A stretch of DNA of 64,000 nt, from NCBI RefSeq assembly GCF_036971445.1, contig NC_091470.1, positions 139,934,001 to 139,998,000 of the forward strand, given 5' to 3'. Numbering within the stretch: the first letter of the stretch is position 1; every line of letters starts with the position of its first letter. The notes beneath the pieces were generated by a model. It ran no database searches. It was not told where the DNA came from and saw only the letters and a list, made by a program, of their open reading frames with translations. Source of the DNA: Narcine bancroftii. Taxonomy: Eukaryota. The translations under genes were made by a program, and so were the position numbers. This document shows, one piece after another, positions 1 to 40,542 of the stretch.

Positions 1-3000
1 TCCCACTGCTCTACAACACACCGCCAGACCTCTCTGCTCTACAACACATCCCCAAATCCCCCTGTTCTACAACACTCTGCTTTACAACACTCCCCCAGAT
101 CCCTGTGCTCTACAACACTCCCCCAGATCCCTCTGCTCTACAACACTCCACCAGATCCCTCTGCTTTACAACACTCCTCCAGATCCCTCTGCTCCACGAC
201 ACACCCCAGACCAACCTGTTCTACAACACTTCCCCAGATCCCTCTGCTTCACAACACTCCCCCAGATCCCTCTGCTCTACGACACACCCCAGACCAACTT
301 GTTCTACAACACATCGCCAGATACCTCTGCTCTACAACACACCCCCAGATCAACCTGTTCAACAACACTCTCCCAGATCCCTCTGTTGTACAACACTCCC
401 GCAGATCCCTCTGCTCCACAACACTCCCCAGATCTCTCTATTCCACAACACTCTGCCTGGATCCATTTGCTCTACCAAACACACCCAGATCCCTCTGTTC
501 TACAACACACCGCCTGATCCCTCTGCTCCACAACACAGCCCCAGATCCCTGTGTTCTACAACACTCCCCCAGTTACCTCTGCTCCACAACACAACCCAGA
601 CTAACCTGTTCTACAAAACTCCACTAGATCCCCCTGCTCTACAACACCCCCCCAGATCCATCTGTTCTACAACACTCCCCCGGATCCCTCTGCTTTGCAA
701 CACTCCCCCAGATCCCTCTGCTCTACAACACTCCCCAGATCTGTCTGCTCTACAACCCTACCTCAGATACCTCTGCTCTACAACACAGCCCCAGATCCCT
801 CTGCTCTACAACACTCCCCCAGATCCCTCTGTTCTACAACACTCCCCCAGATCCCTATGCTCTACAACACTCCAACAGATCTCTCTGCTTTACAACACTC
901 CCCCAGATCCCTGTGGTCTACAACACTCCCCCAGATCCCTCTGATCTACAACACTCCCCCGGATCCCTCTGCTCCATGACACACCCCAGACAAACCTGTT
1001 CTACAACACTCCCCCAGATCCCTCTGCTCTAGAACACTCCCCCAGATCCCTCTGTTCTACAACACTCCCCCGGATCCCTCTGCTCCACAACACACCCCAG
1101 ACCAACCTGTGCTACAACACTCCCCAGATTCGTCTGCTCTACAACACTCCCCAGATCTCTCTGCTCTACAACCCTACCTCAGATACCTCTGCCCTACAAC
1201 ACAGCCCCAGATCCCTCTGTTCTACAACATTCCCCCAGATCCCTCTGTTCTACAACACTCCCCCGGATCCCACTGCTCCACAACACACCCCAGACCAACC
1301 TGTTCTACAACACTCCCCAGATTCGTCTGCTCTACAACACTCCCCAGATCTCTCTGCTCTACAACCCTACCTCAGATACCTCTGCCCTACAACACAGCCC
1401 CAGATCCCTCTGTTCTACAACACTCCCCCAGATCCCTCTGTTCTACAATACTCCCCCGGATCCCTCTACTTCACAACATCCCCCAGATCCCTCTGCTCTA
1501 CAACACACCCGCAGATCCGTCTGCTCTACAACACTCCCCCAGATCCCTCTGCTCTACGACACACCCCAGACCAACTTGTTCTACAACACACCGCCAGATA
1601 CCTCTGCTCTACAACACACCCCCAGATCAACCTGTTCAACAACACTTTCCCAGATCCCTCTGTTCTGCAACACTCCCCCAGATCCCTCTGCTTCACAACA
1701 CTCCCCCAGATCCGTCTGCTCTACAACACTCCCGCAGATCCGTCTGCTCTGCAACACTCCCCCAGATCCCTCTGTTCTACAACACTCCCCCAGATACCTC
1801 TGCTCTGCAACCCTCCCTCAGATCCCTCTGCTCTACAACACACCGCCAGATCTCTCTGCTTTACAACACATCCCCAAATACCCCTGTTCTACAACACTCC
1901 CGCATATCTCTCTGCTTTACAACACTCCCCCAGATCCCTCTGTTCTACAACACTCCCCCGGATCCCTCTGCTTTACAACACTCCCCCAGATCCCTCTGCT
2001 CTACAACACTCCCCCAGATCCCTCTGTTCTACAACACTCCCCCGGATCCCTCTGCTCCACAACACACCCCAGACCAACCTGTTCTACAACACTCCTCCAG
2101 ATCCCTCTGCTCTACAACACTGCCGCAGATCCGTCTGCTCTACAACACTCCCCCAGATCCCTCTGCTCTACGACACACCCCAGACCAACATGTTCTACAA
2201 CACACCGCCAGATACCTCTGCTCTATAACACACCCCCAGATCAACCTGTTCAACAATACTCTCCCAGATCTCCCTATTCTACAACACTCCGCCTGGATCC
2301 ATTTGCTCTACCAAACACACCCAGATCTCTCTGTCCTACAACACACCGCCAGATCCGTCTGCTCCACAACACAGCCCAAGATCCCTCTGTTCTACAACAC
2401 TCCCCCAGATCCCTCTGTTCTACAACACTCCCCCGGATCCCTCTGCTCTACAACACTCCCCCAGATCCCTCTGCTCTACAACACTCCCCCAGATCCCTCT
2501 GTTCTACAACACTCCCCCGGATCCCTCTGCTCCACAACACACCCCAGACCAACCTGTTCTACAACACTCCTCCAGATCCCTCTGCTCTACAACACTGCCG
2601 CAGATCCGTCTGCTCTACAACACTCCCCCAGATCCCTCTGCTCTATGACACACCCCAGACCAACATGTTCTACAACACACCGCCAAATACCTCTGCTCTA
2701 TAACACACCCCCAGATCAACCTGTTCAACAATTCTCTCCCAGATCTCCCTATTCTACAACACTCTGCCTGGATCCATTTGCTCTACCAAACACACCCAGA
2801 TCCCTCTGTCCTACAACACACCGCCAGATCCGTCTGCTCCACAACACAGCCCAAGATCCCTGTGTTCTACAACACTCCCCCAGATCCCTCTGCTCTACGA
2901 CACACCCCAGACCAACATGTTCTACAACACACCGCCAGATACCTCTGCTCTATAACACACCCCCAGATCAACCTGTTCAACAATACTCTCCCAGATCTCC

Positions 3001-4320
3001 CTATTCTACAACACTCCGCCTGGATCCATTTGCTCTACCAAACACACCCAGATCTCTCTGTCCTACAACACACCGCCAGATCCGTCTGCTCCACAACACA
3101 GCCCAAGATCCCTCTGTTCTACAACACTCCCCCAGATCCCTCTGTTCTACAACACTCCCCCGGATCCCTCTGCTTTACAACACTCCCCCAGATCCCTCTG
3201 CTCTACAACACTCCCCCAGATCCCTCTGTTCTACAACACTCCCCCGGATCCCTCTGCTCCACAACACACCCCAGACCAACCTGTTCTACAACACTCCTCC
3301 AGATCCCTCTGCTCTACAACACTGCCGCAGATCCGTCTGCTCTACAACACTCCCCCAGATCCCTCTGCTCTACGACACACCCCAGACCAACATGTCCTAC
3401 AACACACCGCCAGATCCGTCTGCTCCACAACACAGCCCAAGATCCCTCTGTTCTACAACACTCCCCCAGATCCCTCTGTTCTACAACACTCCCCCGGATC
3501 CCTCTGCTTTACAACACTCCCCCAGATCCCTCTGCTCTACAACACTCCCCCAGATCCCTCTGTTCTACAACACTCCCCCGGATCCCTCTGCTCCACAACA
3601 CACCCCAGACCAACCTGTTCTACAACACTCCTCCAGATCCCTCTGCTCTACAACACTGCCGCAGATCCGTCTGCTCTACAACACTCCCCCAGATCCCTCT
3701 GCTCTATGACACACCCCAGACCAACATGTTCTACAACACACCGCCAAATACCTCTGCTCTATAACACACCCCCAGATCAACCTGTTCAACAATTCTCTCC
3801 CAGATCTCCCTATTCTACAACACTCTGCCTGGATCCATTTGCTCTACCAAACACACCCAGATCCCTCTGTCCTACAACACACCGCCAGATCCGTCTGCTC
3901 CACAACACAGCCCAAGATCCCTGTGTTCTACAACACTCCCCCAGATACCTCTGCTCTACAATCCTCCCTCAAATCCCTCTGCTCTACAATTCAGCCCCAG
4001 ATCCCTCTATTCTAAAAGACCCCCCACATAGCTCTGCTCTACAACCCTCCCTTAGATCCCTCTGCTCTACAACACACCGTCAGATACTTCTGCTCTACAA
4101 CACATCCCCAAATCCCCCTGTTCTACAACACTCCTTCAGATCTCTCTGCTTTACAGCACTCCGCCAGATCCCTCTGCTCTACAACACTCCCCCTGATCCC
4201 TCTGTTCTACAACACACGGCCAGATCCGTCTGCTCTACAACACACCTCAAGATCCCTGTGTTCTACAACACTCCCCCTGGATCCCTCTGCTCTACAACAT
4301 TCCTCAAGATCCCTACCACT
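1..4320. repeat. 28-bp unit tandem satellite (consensus ~CTACAACACTCCCCCAGATCCCTCTGCT) with higher-order variant blocks
   Basis: TACAACAC recurs at 111, 139, 167 and onward (28-bp period). The variant unit CTGGATCCATTTGCTCTACCAAAC recurs at ~457, 2293, 2768, 3020 and 3829. The array runs off the window start. Confidence 0.97.
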
Positions 4321-4647
4321 GAATGCGAAGATCCTACCACGTTAAACTTCCCAAAATGTAAACCCTTCACATTGGGGGAGATCCCGTTCATTCAATGGGT
4401 GAATCCTACGCATATTGTACATCCACTCGATCTAGGTTCACTTTCTCTCGGCACGTTCACCCTCTCCTGATTGTGTAGACGCCCACCAGATCACCCCCTC
4501 CTCTCCAGCGCTCCATGGTACAAAGCTCTAGACTTTTCCACTCCTCCCCGAGTCCAGGCAAAGGGAAAATTCAACCCGTGTGCATCTGTGAAGCGTAGAT
4601 ACGTTCGCCCTGGTTCTCGATCCCACCCCGGGCTCCGAGCGCCGGGA

Positions 4648-4686
4648 TGTTTTTGTACGAACACGCAATCTGATTGTAACACAGTG
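4648..4686 (-). promoter_or_regulatory. 23-bp-spacer recombination signal sequence (RAG target)
   Basis: Minus strand: heptamer CACTGTG (4686-4680), 23-nt spacer (4679-4657), nonamer ACAAAAACA (4656-4648). Confidence 0.87.
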
Positions 4687-4700
4687 GCTCCCGCTGTTCC
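4687..4700 (-). other. Antigen-receptor diversity (D) gene segment, GGAACAGCGGGAGC, 5' 12-RSS / 3' 23-RSS (TRBD/TRDD-like)
   Basis: 14 bp bracketed by two outward-facing RSSs with exact 12 and 23 spacers. It is G-rich, open in all three frames (GTAG/EQRE/NSGS) and resembles TRBD cores (GGGACAGGGGGC). Strand is inferred from the 12/23 order. Confidence 0.85.
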
Positions 4701-4728
4701 CACGGTGAAAGAAAGTCGTACAAAAAAA
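4701..4728 (+). promoter_or_regulatory. 12-bp-spacer recombination signal sequence (RAG target)
   Basis: Heptamer CACGGTG (4701-4707), 12-nt spacer AAAGAAAGTCGT, nonamer ACAAAAAAA (4720-4728, followed by CC). Confidence 0.85.
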
Positions 4729-4819
4729 CCATGACTATGTGAGAAACGGACCAGCCAACTCGTTAACACGAAGCATGTGACGTGCAGGGACAGTAAGACC
4801 ACCCTTGGTGTCGTGCATC

Positions 4820-4970
4820 CAATAGGCGCAGGAGTAGGCCATTTGGCACCTCGAGCCAGCCGCCGCCATTCACTGGGATCAAAGCTGGCTGTCTACAGTC
4901 AGCCCCACCGTTTCTGCCCTCTCCCCCACCCCATCCCCTGACTCCACTATTCTTGTGAGCTCTATCTGCC
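4820..4970 (-). mobile_element. CR1 LINE/SINE 3' tail fragment
   Basis: ATAGGCGCAGGAGTAGGCCATTTGG... resembles the CR1 3' ends at 10080 and (reverse) 11735-11760. Confidence 0.6.
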
Positions 4971-5310
4971 CTCTCTCCCCTTTTCTCCCCTCTTTCTCTC
5001 TTTTTCTCCCCCTCTCTCCCACCCTCACTCTCTTTCCCTTTCTGCCATCTCTCCTCTCTCTCCTCCTCTGTCTCACACTCTCTTCCCTCTCTCACGCCTC
5101 TCTCCCTCTCTCCCACCCTTACTCTCTCCACCTTTATCCCCCTCTCTCCTCTCTCTCACGTCTCTCTCCTGTGTTCCTAGCCCTCTCCCCCTCTTTCTCC
5201 TCTCTCTGTCCCACCCTCACTCTCTCTCCCCTCTCCTTCCCCTATTTCTCCTTTTCTCTTCCACCCTCAGCCTCTCTTCCCCGTTCTCCCCCTCTCTCTC
5301 CCCTCTATGA
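4965..5310. repeat. CT-rich polypyrimidine low-complexity tract
   Basis: Almost purely C/T sequence. Confidence 0.95.
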
Positions 5311-6140
5311 ATAAAATTCCATCCACCTTACCCACCACTCTCAGTTAGTAATTATAAAATGTACTCAATGAATATTATATATGTTAATAATATATATGTA
5401 CAAGTGGATGTTTTCCTTCTTTTGGAGGGAGGAGGGTTGAGGATAAAATTAAAAAATATAATTGCATCATTATTAATCCGCCATAGTCCCACTAAGACCC
5501 ACAACAAAATGTGCTTTTACTCCGTTCGCTCGCAAAACCATCTGTGACGGCGCCCTCCACAAAAATCAATGGGTGAGCGATCTTCTCGAGGCCCTGAGAT
5601 GGGCCTTCCATTTTCACCTCCGTTGAGGGAAAAGCTCTAGCCCATGCAAGGAAGGGGGAGGGAGGTCGATCGCCTGGGCTCCAACTGAGGCCTGGCTCTG
5701 GCAATTCTCTAATGAGGTCTGTTTTGAAGTGTTTGCATCGGTTTGCGACCTGCACTAAAAAACCCGCCCCCGCCATCACAATCCCCCTTCCAAAAACACA
5801 TCGATCCTTCATATAAAATGTAACATCATCGGTATAAAATTTTGCGTTCTTCAGATGAGCTTTAACTGAGGTCAGGAAATGTCCATAAATTACTTGGGGT
5901 GGAGGGAGGGGGTGGGGGGTGGGGGAAATGAGGTCTTGTTCCTAAAACAAGATCGAAATTGAAACTTGAGCGGCACAATTGAAGTTTATTAATCGAATGT
6001 TTGAATCACAATAATCTTTAAGCCGGGCTAAAATTCAAATGGCCCAAATTCACGAACAAAGAAAGGAACAGTTTATTTATAAATGGATTCCTCAACCTTT
6101 GCAAAATTATAATTTACCGATGTTAAAACATTTTATGGAA

Positions 6141-7555
6141 TTATATAACCATATAGAAATTTACAGTACAGAAACAGGCCATCTCGGCCCTTCTAGTCCA
6201 CACCGATTTACGTGAAACGCCACTAGTCCCACCTAACCGCTCCCTTTTCCATCACCCTCCAACCCCCGCACATCCATGTACTCATCCAACCTCCTCTTAA
6301 ATGACAGAATTGAACCTGCTGCAAACACGTCTTCCGGAAGGTCGTTCCACTCATCCACCACTCTCTGAGTGAAGAAGCATCCTCTTATGTTACTCTTAAA
6401 GTTTTGTCCCCTAATGCTTAACTTATGACTCGTCATTCCAATCTTCCCTACTTTCAGGAGAAAGAGCCTATTTACAAGTACTCTATTGCCCTCATAATTC
6501 TAAATACCTCTATCAAATTCCCTCTCAACCTTCTACTCTCCAATGAATAAAGTCGCAGTCTACTCAATCCTTCTCCGTATTCAAGATAATGCAATCCAGG
6601 CAACATTTTTGTAAACCTTCTTTGCACCATCTCTACCTTATTAATATCCTTCCTATAATTTGGAGACCAGTACTACCCACAATATTCCAAACTTGGCCTC
6701 ATCAATGCCTTAAATAGTCTCAACATCACCTCCCAGCTTCTATATTCTATGCTATGATTTATGAAGGCCAGCATACCAAAAGCCTTTACCACCCTATCTA
6801 CATAGGAATCTACCTTCAAGGAACGATGAACTGTTATTCCAAGATCCCTCTGTTCCTCTGCATTCCTCAATGCCCCCCTTCACTGCATACATCCTATTTT
6901 GGTTATTCTTCCAAAATGAAGCACCTCACACTTATTCTACATTAAACTCCATCTGCCACATTTCAGCCCACCTTCCTAAACAGTTCAAATCCTTCTGTAG
7001 TCCACGAAAACCCTCCACACTCTCCACCATTCCCCCTATTTTGGTATCATCCACATATTTACTCACCCAATTTATCACTCCATCATGCAAATCGTTAATA
7101 TAAATGAAGACACAACACTGATCCCTGAGGCACACTGCTCATCACCGGCCTCCTTCCTGACAGACAGTTGTCCACCAGGCCTCTCTGGCACCTATTATCC
7201 AGCCACCACTGAACCTATCCATAGAGACTGAACCTTCCTCACCAACCTTTCACGTGGAACCTTATGGAAAGCCTTACTGAAATCCAAACAGACCACATCA
7301 ACTGCTCTACCTTCATCAACCTTCCTGGTCTCCTCTTCAAAAAATTCAACAAGATTCGTCAAATACGACTTTCCCCTCACAAACCCACGTTGGGTGTCCC
7401 TGATCAATCCCTGCCTTTCCAGTTATTTATACATATTATCCCTATGAATTTCTTCCATTAGTTTCCCTACCACCGATGTTAACCTTACTGGCTGATAATT
7501 GCTTGGCCTACACCTTGCGCCCTTTATAAACAACGGAACCACGTTTGCAACCCGC
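6141..7555 (-). mobile_element. CR1 LINE, 5'-truncated, degraded RT and 3' tail
   Basis: Minus-strand peptides AVDVVCLDFSKAFHKVP, FIYINDL..SKYVDDTKIGG, EQRDLGITVHRSLKV and FFTQRVVDEWNDLP. Confidence 0.92.
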
Positions 7556-7689
7556 CAAAGACAAATGTTGCTATTGGAACTGAAGGTAAAATTTCAGCTA
7601 AAACTCCTTTGTATCAGAATAAGCTTTTATATTTTTCAATGAATAATCAATTCTTGAAAGTTTGGGAACAGAAAGGTTGAAGACTGTTA

Positions 7690-8810
7690 TTTTTAAAAAT
7701 ATTTTATTTGAAGTTTAAAATCACATAACCTAACAACATTAGTTACTACATTTTAATACAGATATAATGTGATTAATCGTTTTTATATATAAAAAACCCA
7801 ACCACCTCAACCACCCCACTAATACCCTCCCTCCTCCCTTCCCCACCTACAAAGGAGATCATTATCTAGTACAATCACTTTTAAAATCTATTGGCTGCAG
7901 GAACTGTGGCATCCATCGGAGCAGACCGAGAGATCAAATTCTAACATCAATGATTATCAGGTATAGGCTCCAAAATATTTGTCAGTCAAATTATATGCAA
8001 TCTTTTCAAAAGGAATACAGGCATTTATTTCATTATGCTATCTTTCCATCCCTAAATCCGAGTCAGATTTCCTTGTAATATCTAAACACTTTTGAGGAAC
8101 TGCCAAAGACAAACGAAAAAAAATCATTTTGATACATGTTCAATCTCAATCTTAAACTCATCGACTTAATAGCTCCTAGTAAAAACAACATTGGGTCAAA
8201 AGGTAAACTTACTTTTAATATCTGCTCTTAAAACAATTTACTTTGCAACTGCAAACTTTTAAGTCCATGTCGAATGTCCATGTCACTTCTAAAATATAAA
8301 TCTGAAGAACTAAGTTGAATATTTTTCAGTTTATGCAGAGTCAAGTACAATTGATGTAAGAAATTATACTGCACCAATCCATAACGTACATTGATTACCT
8401 TCGTCATGCTATCTTCACATAAATTTCTCCAAACATTTTCATCAATCTTTCTATCTAAATCCAATTCCCATTTCATTCTTGATTTATGAAGGTCTGGTAT
8501 ATTTTGTAACAACTTATACATTTCAGAAATGATTTTTTAAATCATCTTCAGTAAGTAATAATTCTAAAGAAGATTGTCTAGGTAATTTTAAATCATGACA
8601 CAATTATGCTTATAATTTTTTTAAAAACTTGATAATAACAAAATAAAGTGTTTGGAGGAATTTGAATGATCTTTCACGTGATTAAAAGCAAAATATTTCC
8701 CTGCTTCAAAGCAATCTTTAACATTCAATTCCTATTTTGTTTCATACTTTCAAAAACTGATTATTCACAGTAAAAGAAAAATGTTTATTCTGGTATAAAG
8801 GAGTTGAAGA
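7690..8810 (-). mobile_element. Old L1 ORF2 3' fragment
   Basis: Peptide KWELDL...INVRYGLVQYNFLHQLYLT is homologous to the L1 ORF2 C-terminus seen at 44500-44700. Confidence 0.75.
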
Positions 8811-9860
8811 CTGTCATGAAGCTGGATATTTTGTTTCATTTCAGTGTTTGAAGGAACAATATGGAATTTCTTCAAATACGTTGTTTGGTTATTATCAGGT
8901 GCATGCTTTGTCATTCAATAATTTTGGACGGAGTTTGAGATTACCTAGAAGGACTAGATTTGAAAGTTGAATTATAGGAGGTAAAAAGGGACATTACAGG
9001 AATGTATGCTTTATTGCAACATAAGTTACATGAGAAGAAGCTTCTTCGCTCAGAGAGTGGTGGCTGAGTGGAATGACCTTCTGGAAGAGGTGGTTGCAGC
9101 AGGGTCAATTCTGTCATTTAAGAGTAGGTTGGATGAGTACATGGATGGGGAGGGGGTTGGAGGGTCATGGACAGGAAACAGGTAGGTGGAACTAGTTTAG
9201 TTTCTCATAAATCAGTGTGGACTAGAAAGTGCGACATGGCATGTTTCCGGACTGTAATTGTTATATGGTTATAAGATACCTGTTGGATATTCATAAAGCG
9301 GGAAGTAAGTAGGACTGATCTGTCTGTTTCAATTTCTCAGGATGATTGGATGACAATACGTGAGGACAATGTGACTAAATTAGTAAATGTATGATACAGA
9401 TTAGTTCATTAAAATTCTATCTATCAAATACTTAACTCCTGAGAAGTTGAAGAGATATAGATTCATTTCCTCATAAATGCGTTTTCGATGTGGGGAACAG
9501 ATAGTTTTTTTTTTACATTCAGTATGGTTATGTGAGAAGATGAAACCCCCTTTCGAATTGAATTATGGAAATTTTGGAGGGGCTGTTTAAATGTAAGTTT
9601 TCATTAGATCCTTTAATATTTTTATTGGGATATAAATGGAGCTTGGAATTAAAATTGCATAAATTTCAATTTGTAATTATTCATTTGGCATTGGCAGTAA
9701 CTTGGAAGAATTAAATTGAATTAAGTATCCAAAGATGGCATATGGAACTGCGATCATGTATTCCATTGGAAAAGATAACAATTTTTCTAATAAGTATGCC
9801 TTTTTGTTAATATATGAAATATATAGGTTCCGATATGTAAGGATTGATTGGTGACATCGA
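8810..9860 (+). mobile_element. Old L1 ORF2 3' fragment interrupted by a CR1 tail
   Basis: Degraded L1 C-terminal motifs (CFRCG..FLHSVWLC; CIPLEKIT). Confidence 0.65.
9030..9273 (+). mobile_element. CR1 3' end fragment
   Basis: Closely matches the reverse complement of 6145-6380 and the direct copy at 12320-12555; ends TGTAATTGTTATATGGTTATA. Confidence 0.85.
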
Positions 9861-10069: not shown

Positions 10070-10520
10070 TAGAAAAACATAGGTGCAGGAGTAGGTCATT
10101 TGTCCCTTTAAGCCTACACCACCTGGTTCCTGGTTCCTGCTTTCTTCCCATACCTCTTGATCCACTGAGCCACAAGGGCCAAATCTAACCTACTCTTAAA
10201 TATTGACAAGGAACCGGCCTCAACTACTTCCTGTGGCCATGTTAATTCCGATCCACCACCCTCTGAGAGATTTTTTTCCTCATCTCAGTCCTAAAAAACT
10301 TCTCCCTTATCCTTAAAACGCACCCCCTCCATGGCGAGGATGTTCTTCCTCAGATAAGGAGATCAAAACTGTATGCAGTACTCCAGATGTGGTCTCACCA
10401 AGGCCCTGTACAGCCGTAGGAGGATCTCTATACTCCTGTACGCAAATCCTCTTGCTATGAATGCCAACGTAGCATTCACCTTCCTCATTGCCTGTTGCAC
10501 CTACACACCCACTTTCAATG
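10070..10520 (-). mobile_element. CR1 fragment (3' end plus internal RT piece)
   Basis: ATAGGTGCAGGAGTAGGTCATT tail; CAGTACTCCAGATGTGGTCTCACC encodes VRPHLEYC on the minus strand. Confidence 0.75.
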
Positions 10521-12804: not shown

Positions 12805-13114
12805 AACAGGAAAGGTTCTCCGTGGTGACCTGAAAGAAAGAGGTGATTATCTGGACCCCCCTCCCTCCCAACGAAGGGGAAAGTTTATGGCAAAGGACTG
12901 AAGTGGTCGATTGGGAGGAATCAGTTTGCGTAAAGTGGGCGACGAATCTTTCTCTCTGAAAACCGACAAGAACCTTCCTGAGCAGCGGCCATCAAGCGCC
13001 AAAGCCAGGGGAAGAGTCATAAATGTTAAATTCTGTGGCCAGTAGAATCAAGGAACTTTGAGGAGTGAGATTGGACTTTGAATCGAAGAACTTTTCTAAA
13101 CTTACACACAAATT
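12805..13114 (+). mobile_element. LTR fragment (family of 21185-21830 and 32527-33257)
   Basis: Shares GGTGACCTGAAAGAAAGAGG, TCTCTCTGAAAACC..CAAGAACC and AAGAACTTTTCTAA with those LTRs. Confidence 0.7.
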
Positions 13115-16100
13115 ACACCCAAAGGAAAAGGAATATTCATATTATTCGGGTAGACATAAAACATACTCAAGAATAGACCTATTCCTGTTATCAGCTCGTA
13201 TGCAAGACAGAGGAAGAAAAACAGAATATAAATCTAGAATATTATCGGACCACTCACCCCTGATATTGACAATAGAGTTAGAGGACATCCCTCCAAGAAT
13301 GTATAGATGGAGATTAAACTCCATGCTACTTAAAAGGCAGGATTTTAGAGAATTAATTGAAAGACAAATTAAAATGTACTTTGAAATAAATAAGGAATCA
13401 GTGAAAGATAAGTTTATACTATGGGACGCAATGAAAGCGTTCATCAGAGGGCAAATAATAAGCTATGTAACCAAGATGAAGAAGGACTACAATCAGGAAA
13501 TAGAGCAGTTGGAAAGGGAAATAGTAAAAATAGAAAAAGAATTGGCAATGAAGGAAGACACAACTAAAAGAAGAGAATTTGCAGATAAAAAAATAAAATA
13601 TGAAACACTACAAACATATAAGGTGGAGAAGAACATAATGAAGGCAAAACAGAAATATTATGAACTAGGGTAAAAAACGCACAAAATTCTATCATGGCAG
13701 CTTAAGACAGAACAAACTAAGAGAATGGTATTGGCATCAAGGATAAAAGACAAACAAATCACATATAATCCAACGGAGATTAATGAAAACTTCAGAGAAT
13801 TCTACGAACAATTATACCAAACAGAAAATGAAGGGAAAGAAGACAAAATAGATGAATTTTTAACTAAAATTGAACTACTAAAATTACAAATGGAGGAACA
13901 AAATAAATTAACAGAACCATTTGAAATAGTAGAAATACAAGAGTTAATAAAAAAACTACCAGATAATAAAACACTAGGAGAGGATGGATTCCCAATAGAA
14001 TTCTATAAAACATTTAAAGATGTATTAATTCCTCCCCTCCTGGAAGTAATCAACCAGATTGATAAAACACAAAGCTTACCAAATTCATGCAAAACAGCAA
14101 TAATTTCAGTAATACCAAAGACAGGGAAGGATCCACTCGCACCAGCGTCATATAGACAAATATCTCTACTTAACACAGATTATAAGATAACAGTTAAACT
14201 ATTAGCAAACAGATTGGCCGACTATGTACCAAAAATAGTAAATCTGGACCAAACTGGATTTATTAAAAAAGACGAACAACAGACAATATCTGTAAATTTA
14301 TTAACTTAATTCATGAAGTAGAAGGGAATAAAGCTCCAACAGTAGCAGTTGCTTTAGACGCAGAGAAGGCCTTTGACAGAGTAGAATGGAATTATTTATT
14401 CAAAGTATTACAAAAATTCAGTTTACCAGAGAAGTATATTAATTGGATTAAAGCATTATATAAGGGGCCATTGGCGAAAGTGACAGTAAATGGATATATA
14501 TCAAAGCAATTTAATTTAAGCAGATCAACAAGGCAGGGATGCCCACTATCACCCTTATTATTCGCGTTAGCTATAGAACCACTAGCAGAATTGATAAGAA
14601 CAGAAAATAAAATAAAAGGGATAAAAATAAAAGACAAGGAATATAAAATCAGTTTATTTGCAGATGACGTTATAGTATACTTAACAGAACCAGAAATATC
14701 AATAAAAGAATTACATAAGAAATTGAAGGAATATGAAGAAGTGTCGGGTTACAAGATTAACGCAAATAAAAGTGAAGCAATGCCAATGAATAATGGGGAT
14801 TTCTCAAAATTTAAGAAAGAAGCACCATTCAGATGGCAAATGCAAGCAATACGATACCTAGGTATACAAATAAATAAAAACCTCGGCCACCTACATAAAC
14901 TTAATTATTATCCACTAATGAAAAAATTACAGGTGGACTTAGAGCATTGGAAAGACTTACCACTAACACTAATAGGAAGGATAAACTGTATTAAAATGAA
15001 CATTTTCCAAAGGATACAATACCTATTTCAGGCATTGCCAATACACTTGACAGAGAAATTCTTCAAGGAGTTAAAGAAAATAATAAGGAAATTTTTATGG
15101 AAAGGGGGGAAACTGAGGATAGCACTAGATAAATTAACAGAATGGTATAAACAAGGAGGCTTACAACTACCAAACTTAAAAAATTATTATAGAGCCGCAC
15201 AATTAAGATACCTATCAGATTTTTATCAAACAAGGGAAAAGCCAGATTGGACTAGATTAGAACTAGATAAAATAGGGGCGAAGATACCTGAACATATATT
15301 ATATAAATGGGATGAAAAACTGGTACAACGTAGGAATTCTCCAATATTACATCATCTGCTCAATATTTGGAAGAAGATTCATGTAGAAAGGAATAAAACA
15401 AATTACCAATGACCAAAACTAATACTGACACAAAATCAGCTAATCCCTTTTACAATAGATAACCTTTCCTTTAGAGAATGGGAGAAAAAAGGGATCAAAA
15501 GAATAGAAACTTGCTTTTCAGGAAATAAATTACTATCCTATGAACAAATGAAGGATTAATATAATATAACTCAAAATACAGTTTTGGCATACTACCAACT
15601 GAAATCCTACTTGAAGGACAAATTGGGAAGCAGTCTGAGGTTACCAGAGGGAAGTAATTTTGAATATGTGATTACAGACACAATGATAATCAAAAAATTT
15701 ATAACAAATATGTATATTAAACTGCAAGAAAAGGAGAATGAGGAAACAAATGGTAAAACTAAACAAAAATAGGAACAAGATTTAAACATAAAGATAAAGA
15801 AGGAAGCATGGGAGAAGTTATGCTCTGGAACTATGAGAAATACAATAAACACGAGGTTACATATGATACAATATAACTGGATATACAGGTTATACATTAA
15901 ACTTCAAAAGTTAAATAAATGGGACCCAACAGTATCTGACAGATGTTTTCACTGTAAAAAGGAAATGGGAACAACAATTCATGCAATCTGGACATGTGAG
16001 AAAGTGAAAAAATTTTGGGAAGATCTAAACCAGATATTAAATAAAATCACAGAAAGCAATATACCAAAAAAACCCAGAGATCTTCCTTCTAAGTAACATA

Positions 16101-17147: not shown

Positions 17148-18780
17148 AGATGATCCCCTTCCAAGTGGAGACAGATGCCTCAGATGTAGTGCTAGCGGCC
17201 ACACTGAATCAGGAGGGGCGACCATGGACACTGCAGTGGTCAGAGGTGAGACATTCGGCAGTGGAGAAGGAGGCACATGCAAGTCGTAGAAGCGGTGAGG
17301 CATTGGAGACACTACTTGGCTTGTAAGTGCTTAACTTGGGTCACGGACCAACGATGCATGGCATTCAAGCTCGACAACCAGAAGGGGTGGAAAATAAAAA
17401 AAAAACTTCTGTGCTGGAGGATAGAACTGTCCATGTAAAATTACGACATTCTATACTGGCCCAGGAAAGCTCAACGATGTGCCGTCCAGGGGCATCTGCA
17501 CGGCCCTCAACCACACGGCCCAGCTGCTTGATGAGCTGGGCCACCCGGGGAGGGGTCGCTAGGTTGTTCCATTTCATGAGGACCCAGAGTCTCCCATTCT
17601 CGGTGGAGGAGGTAAGGATGGTGACTGAGTAACATCTGCCCGGAAGGCAAACCGCAGTTCCACCAGCCAGACAGGGCTACACTGATAAAAGTCACCAGAC
17701 CCTTTGAATGCCTCAGCCTCGACTTTAAAGGCCCGCTCCCCTCCTATGACAGTAATGTCAGCTTCCTTAACACCATAGAGGAATACTCCTGCTTCCCTTT
17801 CGCAATCCTGTGCCCCGACATATCAGCAGCCACGGAAATAAAGTGCCTACAATCTATTTTCAGCATGTGCGGGTACCCCAGCTGTATACACACAGACTGG
17901 GGTGCTGCATTCATGACAAAGGTATTGCCACAAGCTGCAACCCCAGGGGTAATGGGCAAGTGGGAAGGGAAAATGCCACTATCTGGAAAACAGTTCTGTT
18001 GACCTTAAAGGCAAAAGACATGCCCGTGGCAAGATGGCAGGACATGATACCAGAGGCTTTACATTCGATACGCTCGCTGTTGTGTACCACCACTAACACG
18101 ACTCCACGTGACCACTTGTTTTCATCTTCAAGGAATGCCGTGACGGGCACGGTGCTGCCGAGATGACACTGGGACCTCCAGAAGCACTGCAGGCCCCACA
18201 GAATGGACACGCTGGTGGGAGCCAGTCGAGCTGAGGCACACGAACCTCCCCCCACCACTACACGGCAGTCGCGTTCGGGGAAGGGTGGGACGACACGGTG
18301 GCTGCCAGGGACCCCGTGCCAGCTGATATCGTGGGCAGTGAGGAAGGATTGCAGATCCCCCTATGGACCCTGATAGTCCAGCAAGATGTACAGCAGGGCA
18401 CCAGGACAATGACCATCATATCAACCCCAAAATGAACCGCTGACCGATACACCTCCAACAGCCTGAACCTGTCCTGAAAGTCCTACAACCCTCCCTGCAG
18501 CCTGTGCTCTCAACCACTCAATTAGGAGCACCCTGCCCCTAATAACCCCCACCTCCCCTGCCAAGTACCCCGAAGATCCAAGAGACTAAGGAAAGCTCGA
18601 CAGATCCTGGACTTATAAACTTTGGGGGGTTGGGGTTGTGGCCAAATTCCTTTAATGGGGGGGGGGGGTGTAATGAATGTGGCCACCACCTGATGACCCT
18701 GTATATAAAGCCGATCAGAGCTCATGCTCCTCCATCGGACCTAGCTGTATAAATCACTAGCTGTATATATCACTCTATTA
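17148..18780 (+). mobile_element. Gypsy/Ty3 3' fragment: RNase H, integrase, G-run PPT (18657-18668), truncated LTR from 18669
   Basis: PFQVETDASDV..ATLNQEGRP and NPRGNGQVGRENATIWK..ALHSIRSLLCT; same family as 50254-53350. Confidence 0.85.
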
Positions 18781-18782
18781 AA

Positions 18783-18981
18783 GGTCCAACAGGTTCGGGA
18801 CTTTATCCCTTGAAGATTTATTGGGACGTTGCCCGGACGTCAGGGACTGAGTTACAGGGAAAGGGTTAACAGGTTTGGGACTTTATATCCTGAATATTTA
18901 CTGGGATGTTGCCTGGATGTCAGGGACTGAGTTACAGGGAAAGGTTCGACAGGTTCGGGACTTTATCCCCTGAAGATTTAC
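18783..18981 (+). repeat. 80-bp CR1-derived minisatellite (~2.5 units)
   Basis: ACAGGTT(C/T)GGGACTTTAT at 18789, 18869 and 18949. Confidence 0.9.
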
Positions 18982-18984
18982 TTG

Positions 18985-20620
18985 GAGGGAGAAAGGGGGA
19001 GAGAGAGATGGTGGAGACAGAGGGATGGAGAGAGGGGGAGGGAGACAGAGAGGTGGAGAGAGGGGAAGAGTCAGTGGTAGAGTGTGGGGGAGAGAGATGA
19101 GGTGAGAGAGAGGGGATGAGAGACTGGGGGAGAGAAGAGAAAATGGAGAAAGATTGGATGAGAGAGCAGGGGTGAGAGGGAGAGAGGAGGAGAATGGGAG
19201 GGTGAGAGAGGGGTAGAGTCAGTGGGAGAAGGTGGGGGAGAGAGAGGGGTGAGCAAGGGAGGGAGTGTGGGGGAGAGAGAGAGGGTGAGCGAGGGAGGGA
19301 GAGTGTGGGGGAGAGAGATCGGGTGGAGGGGATGAGAGAAGGGAGAGGGGGAGATAGGTGAAATGAGGGGGCAGTGAGAGTGGAGAGAGGCATTGAGAAA
19401 GGGTGAGAGAGGTGGTAGAAAGGGGTGAGAGGGGGAGCGAGGAGGAGAGGGGGCTGAGAGAGGGTGAGAAAGGGAGAGGGAGAGAGGCTGAGGGGAAGAG
19501 AGGTGAAGATAGAGGGCGTAGAGAGATGGGAGAGGGAGAGAGTTGGTGGGAAAGGAGGGGAGAGGGGGGCGTAAAAGGGGGAGATCGGAGGAGTGAGGGC
19601 AGAGAGAGAGGGGGAGATAGAGGGTGAAGAGAGGTGGGAGAGCGGAAGAGTCAGTGGGAGAGCATGAGGAGGGAGGAAGGGAGAGCATGAGGAGAGATGG
19701 GTGGAAAGGGGGGAGATGGAGAGGGGAGAGAGGGGTGAGTGAGGAGAGAGGAGGAGAGAGGAGGATAGATAGAATGAGAGAGGAGGAATGAGGGTAGAGA
19801 GAGGAGGAGTGTGGGAGTGTGAGTGGCAGGCAGAGTGAGGGGAGAGGTGGAGAGAGGGTGGGGAGAGAGAGGGTAAGTAAGATTGGGAGAGTTTGGGGGA
19901 GAGAGTGGAGTGAATGGGGAGAGAACAGGTGAGAGGGGGTTGGGAGAAAGGGTGAGTAGGAGCAGGAGAGGGGAGAGAAGGGGTGAGAGAGGAGGAGAGG
20001 AGTGAGGGCAGAGAGGAGGAGAATGAGAGGGCGAGGGATGGGAGAGGGGAAGTGAGGGAGGGAGAGAGAGTGGGAGAAGGTGGGGGAGAGAGGGAGGGTA
20101 GGGAAGAGAGGAGGAGTGAGGTCAGAGAGAGGAGAGTGGGAGGGTGAGGGGCAGGAGGGAGAGCGGGAGACTCAGTGGGAGAAGGTGGGGTGAGAGGGAG
20201 GGAGGGGAGAGAGGGAGAGTGGGGAGGGGGAGTGGAGAGGTGGAGAGAGGGTGAGGGGGTAAAAAGGGGTGAGAGAGAGGGGGAGTGAGGAGGAGACAGG
20301 GGCTGAGAGAGGGTGAGAGTGGAGAGGGAATCGAGGGTGTAGAAAGGTGGAGAGTCGTGAGGAGAGGGTGGAAGAGGGGAAAAAAGGGGGGAGATATGGG
20401 GGGAGGAGTGGGGGAGAGACAGAGAGATAGGGGAAAGAGGGGGGAGTGAGAGTGTGAGAGAGAAAGGGGAGGGGGAGGGAGTGAGATGAGACCGAGAGAG
20501 GGGGAGAGATTGGTGGAGAGTGGGTGTGAGTGAAGGGGAGAGAGTGGGGGTGAGGGGGAGAGAGGTGGAAAGAGTGGGGCTGAGAGAGAAGGAGAGAGAG
20601 AGAGAGAGAGAGAGAGAGGG
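18985..20620. repeat. GA-rich polypurine tract
   Basis: ~1.6 kb of nearly pure G/A ending in (GA)n. Confidence 0.96.
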
Positions 20621-25400: not shown

Positions 25401-28400
25401 GGGCACTGATGGAAGCTATTCCTGGGCCGCTTGCGTCTGTGGCGTCGAGGCAGACAGATTGGAAGGTGCGGGCATTTACCAACCACTTGCCTTTGATGTC
25501 CACCAACAGGCTGTGCTCCCGGAGGAAATCGGTCCCCAACAGAGGTCAATATCAACTTCCAGCGGAACTTGTCCTTGCCAATCTGGATCTGTGCACTGTG
25601 TGTGCCAAAGTTCTTAATTTTTAAATTTTTTAAAATTTTTCACACTATAAACCATATTGACCAAGATACATACAGACAATTTTTCTCTTGAATATATGCA
25701 GTGTCATTTTCTCCCCTTTTTCCTCCCTCCCTCACCCCCTTCCCATTTATTTGAAGTTCAATCTATAAGATACATTAAACCCGTTAAACAATGTTGTCAC
25801 TTAATAAAAATAAACAAGAAATTTTACTGAGTCAGTTCTTTTCATTGTCTTCTCCTTCTGTCATTTTAGGTGGTGGAAGTCCATGGTAGGATTTCTCTAT
25901 TGTATTTCATGTATGGCTCCCATATTTGTTCGAATATTGTGATGTTATTTCTTAAATTATATGTTATTTTTTCTAATGGAATACATTTATTCATTTCTAT
26001 GTACCATTGTTGTATTCTCAAGTTGTCTTCTAATTTCCAGGTTGACGTAATACTTTTTTTGCTACAGCTAAGGCTATCATAACAAATCTTTTTTGTGCTC
26101 CATCCAAATCGAGTCCAAATTCTTTATTTCTTATATTACTTAGGAGGAAGATCTCTGGATTTTTTGGTATATTACTTTTTGTGATTTTATTTAATATCTG
26201 GTTTAGATCTTCCCAAAATTTTTTCACTTTCTCACATGTCCAAATTGCATGAATTGTTCCTATTTCCTTTTTACAGCAAAAACATCTGTCTGACACTGAT
26301 GGGTCCCATTTATTTAACTTTTGAGGTGTGATGTATAGCCTGTGTATCCAGTTATATTGTATCATGCGTAACCTCGTGTTTATTGTATTTCTCATAGCTC
26401 CGGAGCACAGCTTTTCCCATGTTTCATTCTTTATCTTTATGTTTAGATCTTGTTCCCATTTTTGTTTAGGTTTACCATTTGTTTCCTCGTTCTCCTTTTC
26501 TTGCAGTTTGATGTACATGTTTGTTGTAAATTTTTAAATTATCATTGTGTCTGTAATCACATATTCAAAATTGCTTCCTTCTGGTAACCTCAGACTGTTT
26601 CCCAATTTGTCCTTCAAATAGGTTTTCAGTTGGTGGTATGCAAACATTGTATCGTGAGTTATATTATATTTATCCTTCATTTGTTCAAAGGATAGTAATT
26701 TATTTCCCGAAAAATGACTTTCTATTCTTTTGATCCCTTTTCTCTCCCATTCTCTGAAGGAAAGGTTATCTATTGTGAAAGGGATTAGTTGATTTTGCGT
26801 CAATATTAGTTTTGGTAGTTGGTAATTTGTTTTATTCCTTTCTATGTGAATCTTCTTCCAAATGTTGAGCAGATGATGCAATACCGGTGAATTCCTACTT
26901 TGCACCAATTTTTCAACCCATTTATATAGTATATGTTCAGGTATCTTCTCCCCTATTTTATCTAGTTCTAATCTGGTCCAATCTGGTTTTTCCCTTGTTT
27001 GATAAAAATCTGATAGGTATCTTAATAGTGCAGCTCTATAATAATTCTTAAAGTTTGGTAGTTGTAAGCCTCCTTGTTCGTACCATTCTGTTAATTTATC
27101 TAGTGCTATCCTCGGTTTCCCCCCTTTCCATAAGAATTTCCTTATTATTTTCTTTAACTCCTTGAAGAATTTCTCCGTCAAGTGTATTGGCAATGCCTGA
27201 AATAGGTATTGTATCCTTGGGAAAATGTTCATTTTAATACAGTTTATCCTTCCTATTAGTGTTAGTGGTAAGTCTTTCCAATGCTCTAAGTCGTCCTGTA
27301 ATTTTTTCATTAGTGAATAATAATTGAGTTTATATAGATGGCCGAGGTTTTTATTTAGTTGTATACCTAGGTATCGTATTGCTTGCATTTGCCATCTGAA
27401 TGGTGATTCTTTCTTAAATTTTGAGAAATCCGCATTATTCATTGGCATTGCTTCACTTTTATTTGCTTTAATCTTGTATCCCGGCACTTCTCCATATTCC
27501 TTCAATTTCTTATGTAATTCTTTTATTGATATTTCTGGTTCTGTTAAGTATATTATAACGTCATCTGCAAATAGACTGATTTTATATTCCTTCTCTTTTA
27601 TTTTTATCCCTCTTATTTTATTTTCTGTTCTTATCAGTTCTGCTAGTGGTTCTATAGCTAATGCGAACAGTGAGGGAGATAGTGGACATCCCTGCCTTGT
27701 TGATCTGCTTAAGTTAAATTGATTTGAAATATATCCATTTACTGTCACTTTCGCCAATGGCCCCTTATATAATGCTTTAATCCAATTAATATATTACTCT
27801 GGTAGGCTGAATTTTTGTAGTACTTTGAATAAATAATTCCATTCTACATCTGTCAAAGGCCTTCTCTGCGTCTAAAGCAACCGCTACTGTTGGAGTTTTA
27901 TTTCCTTCTACTGCATGAATTAAGTTAATAAATTTACAAATATTGTCTGATGTTTGTCTTTTTTTAATAAATCTAGTTTGGTCTAGATTTACTATTTTTG
28001 GTACATAGTCGGCCAATCTGTTTGCTAATAGTTTAGCTATTATCTTATAGTCAGTGTTAAGTAGAGCCTATATGATGCTGGTGCTAGTGGATCTTTCCCT
28101 GTCTTTGGTATTACTGTAATTATTGCTGTTTTGCATGAATCTGGTATGTTTTGTGTTTTATCAATCTGGTTGATTACTTCCAGAAGGGGAGGAATTAATA
28201 AGTCCTCTGTTTTTAATTTTGGTAGTTCAATTTTAGTTAGAAATTCATCTATTTTGTCTTCTTTCCCTTCATTTTCAGTTTGATATAGTTGTTTGTAGAA
28301 TTCCCTGTAGTTTTCATTGATCTCCGTTGGATTTTATGTAATTTGTTTGTCCTTTTTCCTTAATACCAATACCATTCTTGTAGGTTGTTCTGTCTTAAGC

Positions 28401-33875: not shown

Positions 33876-34091
33876 NNNNNNNNNNNNNNNNNNNNNNNNN
33901 NNNNNNNNNNNNNNNNNNNNNNNNNNNNNNNNNNNNNNNNNNNNNNNNNNNNNNNNNNNNNNNNNNNNNNNNNNNNNNNNNNNNNNNNNNNNNNNNNNNN
34001 NNNNNNNNNNNNNNNNNNNNNNNNNNNNNNNNNNNNNNNNNNNNNNNNNNNNNNNNNNNNNNNNNNNNNNNNNNNNNNNNNNNNNNNNNNN
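33876..34091. other. Assembly gap (216 N)
   Basis: Run of N. Confidence 1.
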
Positions 34092-39149: not shown

Positions 39150-40172
39150 GTGCATGACAAAAAAAACACTGATGGGAGGGGGGACCAGCTGAGGAGTCGA
39201 TCTCCACAGCTGAGAATGACAGCTACAACACAACAACAGGAAGAGAACATAGAAAACAACGAGAACAAGAAAGAAGAGAGTAAAACGAAAACAAGGAAAA
39301 AACAGATGACCAACCCAGAGGAAGAAGAAGAAGAAGAACATAGAGAAATAGAAGAAGAAGGGAAAGGCAAGACAATGGATATATATTTTTTTAAAGAATA
39401 TATGGAATCAGTAAAAGAATGGCAATCACAAGAATTTAGTGAAATAAAAAGAAGAATTAAAAGTACAGAAGAAAAAATGAATAGATTAGAGATGGTCATG
39501 TCAGATATAGGAAAAAGAGTGGACAAGGTGGAAGAACGAGAAACAGCCGTAGAAATGGAAGTAGAGGACTTAAAAAAGAAATTAGAAGAATCTAATAAAA
39601 AAGTTAAAGAGAAACAAGAGCTGTTAGCTCAGAAGATAGATATAATGGAAAATTATAATAGAAGAAATAATATAAAGATAGTGGCCCTTAAAGAAGATGA
39701 AGAAGGCAAGAATGTGAGAGAATTTATAAAAGATTGGATCCCCAGGGTCCTAGGAAGACCAGAATTACAGGAAGAAATGGAAATAGAAAGGGCACATAGA
39801 ACATTAGCCCCGAAACCACAGCCACAACAAAAACCAAGATCCATTTTAGTAAAATTCCTAAGATATACAACAAGAGAAAATATATTGGAGAAAGCAATGA
39901 AGAAAATAAGAGAAGACAAAAAGCCACTGGAATACAAAGGTCAAAACATTTTTTTCTATCTAGACATAAGTTTTGAACTCCTGAAGAAGGGAAAGGAGTT
40001 TAATACAGCAAAAGCGATCCTATGGAAAAAAGGATATAAATTTATGCTAAAGTACCCAGCAGTACTTAAAATAATTATTCCACGGCAGCAAAACAGACTA
40101 TTCTCGGATCCGGAGGAAGCACGAAAATTTGCAGAACAACTACAAAACAGACAGAGAGATGAAGACATGTAA
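39150..40172 (+). CDS. L1 ORF1p (coiled coil, RRM, CTD), open C-terminal 340-codon portion
   Basis: MENYNRRNNIKIV, EIERAHR, PRSILVKFLRY, KYPAVL. Confidence 0.8.
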   Translation: MHDKKNTDGRGDQLRSRSPQLRMTATTQQQEENIENNENKKEESKTKTRKKQMTNPEEEEEEEHREIEEEGKGKTMDIYFFKEYMESVKEWQSQEFSEIKRRIKSTEEKMNRLEMVMSDIGKRVDKVEERETAVEMEVEDLKKKLEESNKKVKEKQELLAQKIDIMENYNRRNNIKIVALKEDEEGKNVREFIKDWIPRVLGRPELQEEMEIERAHRTLAPKPQPQQKPRSILVKFLRYTTRENILEKAMKKIREDKKPLEYKGQNIFFYLDISFELLKKGKEFNTAKAILWKKGYKFMLKYPAVLKIIIPRQQNRLFSDPEEARKFAEQLQNRQRDEDM

Positions 40173-40542
40173 CGAGAGTAAAAATGACCACGAACTATAT
40201 GTATGTGTGTATATGGGTATATATATATATATGTGTGTGTGTGTGTATGTATATATGTGTGTACATGAGTGTATCCATGTTTAAAGGAAAATATAGAGAG
40301 TACAGATAAGAATTAATAAGGGAAAGAAAGGGAAGAGAGGAAGTAAGGAGGGAATTAAGAGAGTGACCTTTGTTATATATGAAAATTGAAATCTTTTCTG
40401 GGGGGCTGGGTGAGGAGGAGTTACGGTCACTGCGAAATCACTTGACGCTTGCGAGTGAATTCGCAAATCCAAATGGAGAGGGGAGATGTGGTTGCCCGAC
40501 AAGGGATAAAGGGCAACTCAGGAAGGGGAGAGGATAGTGGGG

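What the first reader, a model, noticed from the sequence alone, without database searches (positions are those of the whole stretch)
4648..4730. Hidden V(D)J D segment with exact 12/23 recombination signals
Seen: on the minus strand, TTTTTTTGT-12 nt-CACCGTG [GGAACAGCGGGAGC] CACTGTG-23 nt-ACAAAAACA. Both heptamers keep the CAC at the coding border, both nonamers keep the A-tract, and the spacers are exactly 12 and 23. Known: 5'-12/3'-23 is the arrangement of TRBD and TRDD segments and of cartilaginous-fish IgH D1. The core is open in all frames (GTAG/EQRE/NSGS) and resembles TRBD GTGG/GTSG. Inference: this is a RAG1/2 substrate, so the window lies in a T-cell-receptor (beta or delta) or related locus transcribed towards lower coordinates. 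ORF-based annotation would miss it entirely.
Basis: partly seen in the sequence, partly recalled or inferred. Interest (0 to 1): 0.9.

Follow-up and report, generated by a model that had tools for sequence, protein, structure and literature searches.

The report
Solitary TCR-beta-type D gene segment
A very good antigen-receptor D segment (12-spacer signal, 14-base G-rich core, 23-spacer signal) really is here, probably an extra or stray member of the T-cell-receptor beta locus of an electric ray, but the window holds no J, C or V partner and nothing shows that it is used.

Summary
On the minus strand at 4648-4728 lie TTTTTTTGT, a 12-nt spacer, CACCGTG, the core GGAACAGCGGGAGC, CACTGTG, a 23-nt spacer and ACAAAAACA. 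These are the only two near-consensus recombination signals in the 64 kb. The pair is expected about 5e-6 times per window and about 0.3 times per 4-Gb genome. The core is three edits from the vertebrate-conserved TRBD core GGGACAGGGGGC (chance 8e-5 to 8e-3). A second DNA sample carries the unit unchanged. One contig of a probable RNA run holds a paralogous core-end/23-signal copy, 56 of 63 letters alike.

The window has no V, J or C exon, only retroelements. A 28-bp minisatellite of at least 4.3 kb starts 334 nt downstream of the D and runs off the window.

This scan had not noted this D. It had noted a TCR-beta D1-D2-J-C cluster 126 kb beyond the window's end (s1-878358). That cluster probably lies on the other strand.

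Verdict: a real TRB-type D segment, solitary here, whose use is unproven. It is a new member of a known kind, of modest interest.

The parts
4720..4728 (-). 5' nonamer TTTTTTTGT (ACAAAAAAA read from the coding side; 2 mismatches, at positions 8-9)
4708..4719 (-). 12-nt spacer of the 5' signal (ACGACTTTCTTT)
4701..4707 (-). 5' heptamer CACCGTG (CACGGTG read from the coding border; CAC kept, 1 mismatch at position 4)
4687..4700 (-). D core GGAACAGCGGGAGC. It is open in all three frames (GTAG/EQRE/NSGS) and is edit distance 3 from the conserved TRBD core GGGACAGGGGGC
   Evidence: PMC11754216
4680..4686 (-). 3' heptamer CACTGTG (1 mismatch at position 4)
4657..4679 (-). 23-nt spacer of the 3' signal. 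It is largely shared with a paralogous copy seen in a contig of run X10
4648..4656 (-). 3' nonamer ACAAAAACA (1 mismatch at position 9)
4315..4960 (.). Unique, CpG-dense block that carries the D. It has 34 CpG in 646 nt. The stretch 4401-4900 has CpG observed/expected 0.85 against a window median of 0.44. It is single copy within the window and has no terminal inverted repeats round it.
2..4314 (-). 28-bp minisatellite, about 152 units with a 111-bp higher order, G-rich on the D's sense strand. It starts 334 nt downstream of the 3' nonamer and runs off the window start. It fills the place where a J cluster would be expected.
4820..4860 (.). Core of a high-copy interspersed repeat about 90 nt upstream of the D. 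It is not part of the D unit and marks the upstream limit of the unique sequence.
   Evidence: hundreds- to thousands-fold depth in all four runs, with unlike flanks

Best explanation
This is a genuine germline D gene segment of the T-cell-receptor beta type. A 14-nt G-rich core is flanked by a 12-spacer signal on its 5' side and a 23-spacer signal on its 3' side, on the minus strand. It belongs by descent to the TRB D family of this genome, which earlier scan notes call the lesser electric ray.

Expected mechanism (inferred, not shown): RAG1/2 would pair the 3' 23-signal with the 12-signal of a J-beta segment to make a D-J joint. It would then pair the 23-signal of a V-beta with the 5' 12-signal.

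No J, C or V lies in the window, so the partner must lie outside it. In my order of likelihood:
1. An unseen J-C block at lower coordinates beyond the minisatellite. That would be a second TRB unit, head-to-head with the known one.
2. No partner at all: an orphan copy that is still intact.
3. Inversional joining to the D-D-J-C cluster about 185 kb away.

I put about 0.8 on 'real TRB-type D segment' and about 0.4 on 'actually used'.
For: - Exact architecture with all functionally critical positions kept. That CAC and nonamer A5-A7 are the critical positions is established knowledge, from memory.
- These are the only two near-consensus signals in 64 kb, and they face each other across 14 nt. The pair is expected 5e-6 times per window, and the pattern matched in 0 of 100 shuffles.
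- The core is edit distance 3 from the vertebrate-conserved TRBD core. The chance of that is 8e-5 (uniform) to 7.6e-3 (same composition) (PMC11754216).
- The unit is identical in a second DNA sample (X5, record 10).
- A 180-nt contig of run X10 (guessed to be RNA) matches 4633-4695 in 56 of 63 letters and is unlike beyond. So a paralogous D/23-signal copy exists, and its similarity to this one is confined to the core and signal. Conserved D-signal spacers among TRBD paralogues are reported in trout (PMC10464911).
- The D sits in the most CpG-dense unique 500 nt of the window. It is not part of a repeat family or a transposon with terminal repeats.
- Lead, not verified by me: a followed-up scan note places a TRB D1-D2-J1-4-C cluster 126,274 nt beyond the window's end on the same piece.
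Against: - No J (FGXG plus a 12-signal), no V-set or C1-set exon, and no V-like end before any weaker signal was found anywhere in the window.
- In described TRB loci a D lies closely upstream of its J cluster. Here the 334 nt downstream hold no J, and then come at least 4.3 kb of minisatellite.
- No RNA contig covers this copy, and no joint or loose end was seen at the heptamer borders. Only contigs were available, and they cannot show rare rearranged molecules.
- The TRB linkage and the species rest on earlier AI notes that I could not check.
- The core is 14 nt and differs from the conserved 12-mer by one substitution and two insertions.
Confidence: 0.78

Rival explanations
1. Orphan relic. 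This is a true TRBD copy by descent, stranded away from any J-C block by duplication, inversion or the minisatellite expansion, and never used. Its signals are still intact only because elasmobranch DNA changes slowly or because the copy is young.
For: - It is solitary in the window: 59 kb upstream hold only retroelements, and no J lies downstream before the window ends.
- It is probably inverted relative to the only noted TRB cluster (inference from unverified notes).
- No RNA contig lies on this copy.
Against: - Both signals keep every critical position, while similarity to the paralogue is lost just outside the signal. That pattern looks more like constraint than like a young neutral copy.
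- The surroundings are CpG-dense rather than CpG-depleted.
- What lies beyond the window start is unknown.
Confidence: 0.35
2. Chance pair of cryptic recombination signals with no relation to antigen-receptor genes.
For: - Cryptic signals are common at permissive thresholds, about 5e-4 per bp (PMC2193808).
- At my stringent threshold about 0.3 such pairs are still expected somewhere in a 4-Gb genome.
- There are no Ig-superfamily exons in the window.
Against: - The core also matches the conserved TRBD core (chance at most 8e-3). That brings the genome-wide expectation to roughly 2e-3 or less.
- A paralogue exists that shares the 23-nt spacer.
- A TRB cluster is noted on the same piece within 200 kb.
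Confidence: 0.03
3. A D segment of another locus type: either a TCR delta D, or a D of a cartilaginous-fish IgH (IgM/IgW/IgNAR) cluster or its remnant.
For: TRD D segments share the 5'-12/3'-23 arrangement.
Against: - IgH clusters are compact. No V, second D, J or C was found near the D or anywhere in the window.
- The core resembles TRBD.
- Scan notes place the TRD D-D-J-C cassette on another sequence piece and TRB on this one (unverified).
Confidence: 0.05
4. A D unit carried here by a mobile element. The same scan noted a TCR V pseudogene inside a hAT transposon elsewhere in this genome.
For: - The window is dense in transposons, and a high-copy repeat core lies 90 nt upstream.
- There is a precedent note, s1-877789 (unverified).
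Against: - No terminal inverted repeats flank the D within 4300-9500.
- The stretch 4633-4800 is not multi-copy in four runs, apart from one paralogous contig.
- Other copies of the repeat core diverge from this sequence at 4820, so the D lies outside that element (loose ends).
Confidence: 0.04

Closest known systems
TRBD gene segments of jawed vertebrates (conserved core GGGACAGGGGGC; 5' 12-signal, 3' 23-signal)
   Same: It has the same signal arrangement, a G-rich core readable in all three frames, and a core three edits from the conserved 12-mer (PMC11754216; PMC10464911).
   Different: The core is 14 nt, with one substitution and two single-base insertions. No J cluster follows within 4.6 kb, whereas described TRBD genes lie just upstream of their J cluster. 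Use was not shown.
Salmonid TRB organisation: two V-D-J-C loci in opposite orientation on one chromosome (PMC10464911)
   Same: It would be a precedent if this minus-strand D belongs to a second TRB unit facing away from the noted D-D-J-C cluster. That paper also reports conserved 12- and 23-nt D-signal spacers among paralogous TRBD genes, as the X10 paralogue suggests here.
   Different: No second J-C block or V array has been seen here, and the orientation of the neighbouring cluster is inferred from unverified notes.
Inversional joining in TCR loci (the inverted V gene 3' of the last C-beta in mammals and duck; PMC10464911, PMC5278385)
   Same: A segment lying in the opposite orientation can still be used, by inversion instead of deletion.
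   Different: The known cases in TRB are V segments close to the C gene. This would be a D about 185 kb away, and no evidence of any such joint exists.
Cryptic recombination signals (Cowell et al. 2003, PMC2193808)
   Same: These are heptamer-spacer-nonamer matches outside annotated gene segments.
   Different: Here two near-consensus signals of complementary spacer length face each other across a TRBD-like core. That is far rarer than single cryptic signals.
TRB D1-D2-J1-4-C cluster noted earlier in this scan (s1-878358)
   Same: It lies on the same sequence piece, about 126 kb beyond the window's end, and probably belongs to the same D family. The X10 paralogue may be one of its D segments.
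   Different: This D is solitary and probably on the other strand. I could not read that cluster, so no direct sequence comparison was made.

Membership tests
TRBD (T-cell-receptor beta D gene segment) | 5' recombination signal with a 12-nt spacer, CAC at the coding border and an A-tract nonamer | tested here: met
   CACGGTG-12-ACAAAAAAA at 4701-4728
TRBD (T-cell-receptor beta D gene segment) | 3' recombination signal with a 23-nt spacer | tested here: met
   CACTGTG-23-ACAAAAACA at 4686-4648 on the minus strand
TRBD (T-cell-receptor beta D gene segment) | Short G-rich core, open in all frames, related to the conserved GGGACAGGGGGC | tested here: met
   The core is 14 nt, has no stop in three frames and is edit distance 3 from the conserved core (chance 8e-5 to 7.6e-3) (PMC11754216)
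TRBD (T-cell-receptor beta D gene segment) | Lies in the TRB locus, upstream of a J-beta cluster and C-beta on the same strand | tested here: inconclusive
   No J or C lies in the 4.6 kb downstream or anywhere in the window. The downstream side is cut off by the window start inside a minisatellite.
TRBD (T-cell-receptor beta D gene segment) | Found in rearranged TCR-beta junctions, or cut by RAG in lymphocytes | tested here: inconclusive
   Only assembled contigs of four runs could be laid. They showed no joint and no loose end at the heptamer borders, but contigs cannot show rare rearranged molecules.
Cartilaginous-fish IgH cluster D segment | Sits inside a compact V-D-(D)-J-C cluster, with V and J within about a kilobase (from memory) | tested here: not met
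   No V-set or C1-set domain in 282 open frames of at least 62 aa, no J motif, and no V-like end before any signal
TRDD (T-cell-receptor delta D segment) | Lies in the TRA/TRD locus, upstream of J-delta and C-delta | tested here: inconclusive
   No J or C in the window. Scan notes put the TRD cassette on another piece (unverified). The core resembles TRBD.
Chance cryptic signal pair | Occurs at a frequency compatible with random sequence | tested here: not met
   Expected 5e-6 times per window and about 0.3 times per 4 Gb for the signals alone. Multiplying by at most 8e-3 for the core similarity gives far below one per genome.

The most novel reading that the evidence does not exclude
The D is functional although it is solitary and inverted relative to the known D-D-J-C cluster. 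Either it marks a second, head-to-head TRB unit, an arrangement so far described in salmonids and not, in the papers I could search, in cartilaginous fish. Or it is used by long-range inversional D-to-J joining over about 185 kb, which would add a third D to the beta-chain repertoire.
Probability: 0.3. Interest if true: 0.5.

Novelty: new member of a known kind. Interest (0 to 1): 0.33.

Why it matters
D segments are too short for gene finders, so maps of TCR loci in sharks and rays are incomplete. I found no paper in the searchable library on TCR loci of electric rays.

An intact beta-type D that lies far from any visible J-C block, probably on the opposite strand to the neighbouring cluster, is a useful landmark for annotating this TRB locus. 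It also gives a concrete test of whether batoid TRB has more than one rearranging unit or uses inversion.

If it is merely an orphan copy, it is an ordinary by-product of locus duplication. In neither case does it change how V(D)J recombination is understood.

Tried and rejected
- **V, J or C in the window:** I ran regex scans for V (C..W..Q..D.A.Y.C) and J (FGXG, with or without a 12-signal) in six frames. I also ran Pfam on 282 stop-to-stop frames of at least 62 aa outside low-complexity DNA. Only reverse transcriptase, integrase, RNase H, gag, protease and endonuclease domains came up.
- **Weaker signals:** a relaxed scan gave 30 hits. None follows a V-like end.
- **Copies in the window:** none.
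- **Transposon termini round the D:** none.
- **DNA hairpin:** folding is no better than shuffles (z -0.45).
- **Rfam:** no match in the window.
- **Reads:** only Logan contigs were on offer. There were no joints, no RNA contig on this copy and no information on tissue. 'No support' here is not evidence against use.
- **Scan notes by sequence and by 'near':** blank.
- **Literature:** I found no germline TRBD of a shark or ray in the papers I could open. PMC3222143 is not held.
- **RIC scores:** not computed, because the model's parameters are not available here.
- **N run 33876-34091:** left untouched.
- **Retrovirus-like stretch:** only described.

Full report
**What is there.** The minus strand of 4648-4728 reads TTTTTTTGT, ACGACTTTCTTT (12 nt), CACCGTG, GGAACAGCGGGAGC, CACTGTG, TTACAATCAGATTGCGTGTTCGT (23 nt), ACAAAAACA. 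Read from the coding borders, the signals are CACGGTG-12-ACAAAAAAA and CACTGTG-23-ACAAAAACA. Every deviation from CACAGTG/ACAAAAACC falls on heptamer position 4 or nonamer positions 8-9. These are the positions that tolerate change best; that, and the importance of CAC and nonamer A5-A7, are established knowledge that I give from memory. The core has no stop in any frame (GTAG, EQRE, NSGS).

**Is it more than chance?**
- I fixed CAC and allowed at most one further heptamer mismatch and two nonamer mismatches. These two signals are then the only hits in the whole window, on both strands, for spacers 12 and 23.
- Block-wise Markov shuffles give 0.14 and 0.19 hits per window. A 12-signal and a 23-signal facing each other across 6-30 nt are expected 5e-6 times per window and about 0.3 times in a 4-Gb genome.
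- The combined pattern matched once, and in none of 100 dinucleotide shuffles.
- The signals alone therefore do not exclude a one-off chance hit somewhere in a large genome. The core does. It is three edits (one substitution, two single-base insertions) from GGGACAGGGGGC, the TRBD core reported as conserved across vertebrates (PMC11754216). Random 14-mers reach that similarity at 8e-5 (uniform) to 7.6e-3 (same composition).
RIC-passing cryptic signals occur at about 5e-4 per bp (PMC2193808), so by my rough arithmetic D-like pairs at that threshold would be common.

**Evidence from sequencing runs.** Only assembled contigs were available.
- A DNA run from another sample and study (X5, labelled as a different organism) covers 4405-4909 in three contigs with no difference. 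The D unit lies wholly inside one of them, so the unit is real DNA and not an assembly artefact.
- In run X10, which the tool guesses to be RNA, a 180-nt contig matches 4695-4633 in 56 of 63 letters. That stretch is the last nine core bases, the whole 23-signal and 15 nt beyond. The contig then runs on for 117 nt that are unlike the window.
- So a paralogous D/23-signal copy exists, possibly transcribed, and its resemblance to this copy is confined to the core and signal. Trout TRBD paralogues likewise keep their 12- and 23-nt spacers (PMC10464911).
- No contig of the three putative RNA runs lies on this copy itself. No joints or loose ends lie at the heptamer borders. Contigs cannot show rare rearranged molecules, so this says nothing against use.
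- The stretch 4820-4860 is the core of a high-copy interspersed repeat. Other copies diverge from the window at 4820, so the D lies outside that element.

**Surroundings.**
- Downstream of the D (lower coordinates) come 334 nt of unique sequence without a J. Then a 28-bp minisatellite of about 152 units, G-rich on the D's sense strand, fills 2-4314 and runs off the window.
- Upstream, a GA-rich low-complexity stretch is followed by 59 kb of retroelements: LINE reverse transcriptases and endonucleases, and retrovirus-like gag, protease, RNase H and integrase pieces.
- I scanned 282 stop-to-stop frames of at least 62 aa against Pfam. None hits V-set, C1-set or any Ig family.
- Six-frame regex scans found no V and no J. 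None of 30 weaker signal matches follows a V-like end.
- The D block (4315-4960) is single copy in the window and has no terminal inverted repeats round it.
- It is also the most CpG-dense unique stretch of the window. It has 30 CpG in 4401-4900, with observed/expected 0.85 against a median of 0.44. That fits a germline-hypomethylated regulatory spot, but this reading is only an inference.

**Locus context.** It comes only from earlier notes of this scan, which are leads and not evidence.
- The notes call the genome an electric ray, and one says lesser electric ray.
- A followed-up note (s1-878358) describes a TRB D1-D2-J1-4-C cluster that starts 126,274 nt beyond the window's end and spans 22,307 nt.
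- A first-reader note (s1-878377) puts a candidate E-beta enhancer at 151,722 nt beyond the end.
- If the enhancer lies 3' of C, as in mammals, that cluster is on the plus strand. Our minus-strand D would then be about 185 kb upstream of it and inverted.

**Interpretation.**
- The unit is a TRB-type D segment by structure and very probably by descent (about 0.8).
- How it would work is textbook and inferred: the 3' 23-signal joins to a J-beta 12-signal, and then a V-beta 23-signal joins to the 5' 12-signal.
- Whether it works at all is open (about 0.4).
- It may serve an unseen J-C block below the window start. Two V-D-J-C units in opposite orientation are known in salmonids (PMC10464911).
- It may be an intact orphan.
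- It may join by inversion, as the inverted V gene 3' of C-beta does (PMC10464911, PMC5278385).
- Intact signals next to flanks that no longer resemble the paralogue, together with the undepleted CpGs, lean slightly towards constraint. The missing J and the solitary, probably inverted position lean towards an orphan.
- The chance reading (about 0.03), an IgH or TRD D (about 0.05) and transposon carriage (about 0.04) are poorly supported.

**Novelty and interest.** D segments are always invisible to ORF-based annotation, so 'hidden' is normal. This is a new member of a known kind. Its only unusual traits are its isolation, its probable inversion and the large minisatellite beside it. Interest is modest (0.33). 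The scan had noted the neighbouring TRB cluster but not this D.

**Housekeeping.** The N run at 33876-34091 was left alone. The retrovirus-like pieces were only described.

Noticed in passing
window 2-4314: A very large minisatellite: a 28-bp unit (CTCTGCTCTACAACACTCCCCCAGATCC on the plus strand), about 152 copies with a 111-bp (four-unit) higher order. It is G-rich on the D's sense strand and runs off the window start. Blocks of several hundred bases recur almost exactly, which points to recent expansion.
   Followed up: partly
window 4401-4900: The 500 nt round the D are the most CpG-dense unique stretch of the window (30 CpG, GC 0.54, observed/expected 0.85 against a median of 0.44). This is CpG-island-like and could be a germline-hypomethylated regulatory spot.
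   Followed up: partly
window 4657-4667 and 4716-4726: The two nonamer regions pair over 11 nt (TTTTTTGTACG with CGTACAAAAAC). The complementarity runs 3 nt past the nonamers into both spacers. The fold is no more stable than shuffles.
   Followed up: yes
window 4633-4695 (run X10, a 180-nt contig): A paralogous copy of the core end plus the 23-signal, with 56 of 63 letters alike and unlike flanks, in a run guessed to be RNA. It may be one of the D segments of the neighbouring TRB cluster seen in a germline transcript.
   Followed up: partly
window 4820-4860 (also 10079-10102): A 41-nt core of a very high-copy interspersed repeat. It is present at hundreds- to thousands-fold contig depth in DNA and putative RNA runs.
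   Followed up: partly
window 18780-20620 and 53553-62811: Two huge purine/pyrimidine low-complexity tracts in opposite sense: GA-rich over 1.6 kb at 18983-20620 and CT-rich over 6.7 kb at 53553-60320. An array of the same 80-bp tandem repeat lies near each: 18780-18986 abuts the GA tract, and 62610-62811 lies about 2.3 kb past the CT tract.
   Followed up: no
window about 37000-49500, minus strand: Retrovirus-like remains in pieces: Gag_p30 plus a zinc knuckle (47409-48413), protease (46781-47497) and RNase H (38095-38895). A plus-strand LINE (reverse transcriptase and zf-RVT, 42713-44967) interrupts them. I only described these and did no reconstruction.
   Followed up: no
window 13062-15412 and 42271-44967; 26534-27793: Several copies of LINE-type reverse transcriptase/endonuclease elements. 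Two of them carry the same internal 20-bp tandem repeat (14604-14649 and 43362-43407).
   Followed up: no
window 6161-6394 and 9024-9257: A 234-nt inverted repeat (81% complementary), 2.6 kb apart. It looks like two opposed copies of one interspersed repeat.
   Followed up: no
window 60879-61355 and 61768-62091: Tandem repeats of 153 bp (3 copies) and 44 bp (7 copies) near the window's end.
   Followed up: no
window 33876-34091: A run of 216 N (a gap or masked stretch). I left it as it is.
   Followed up: no
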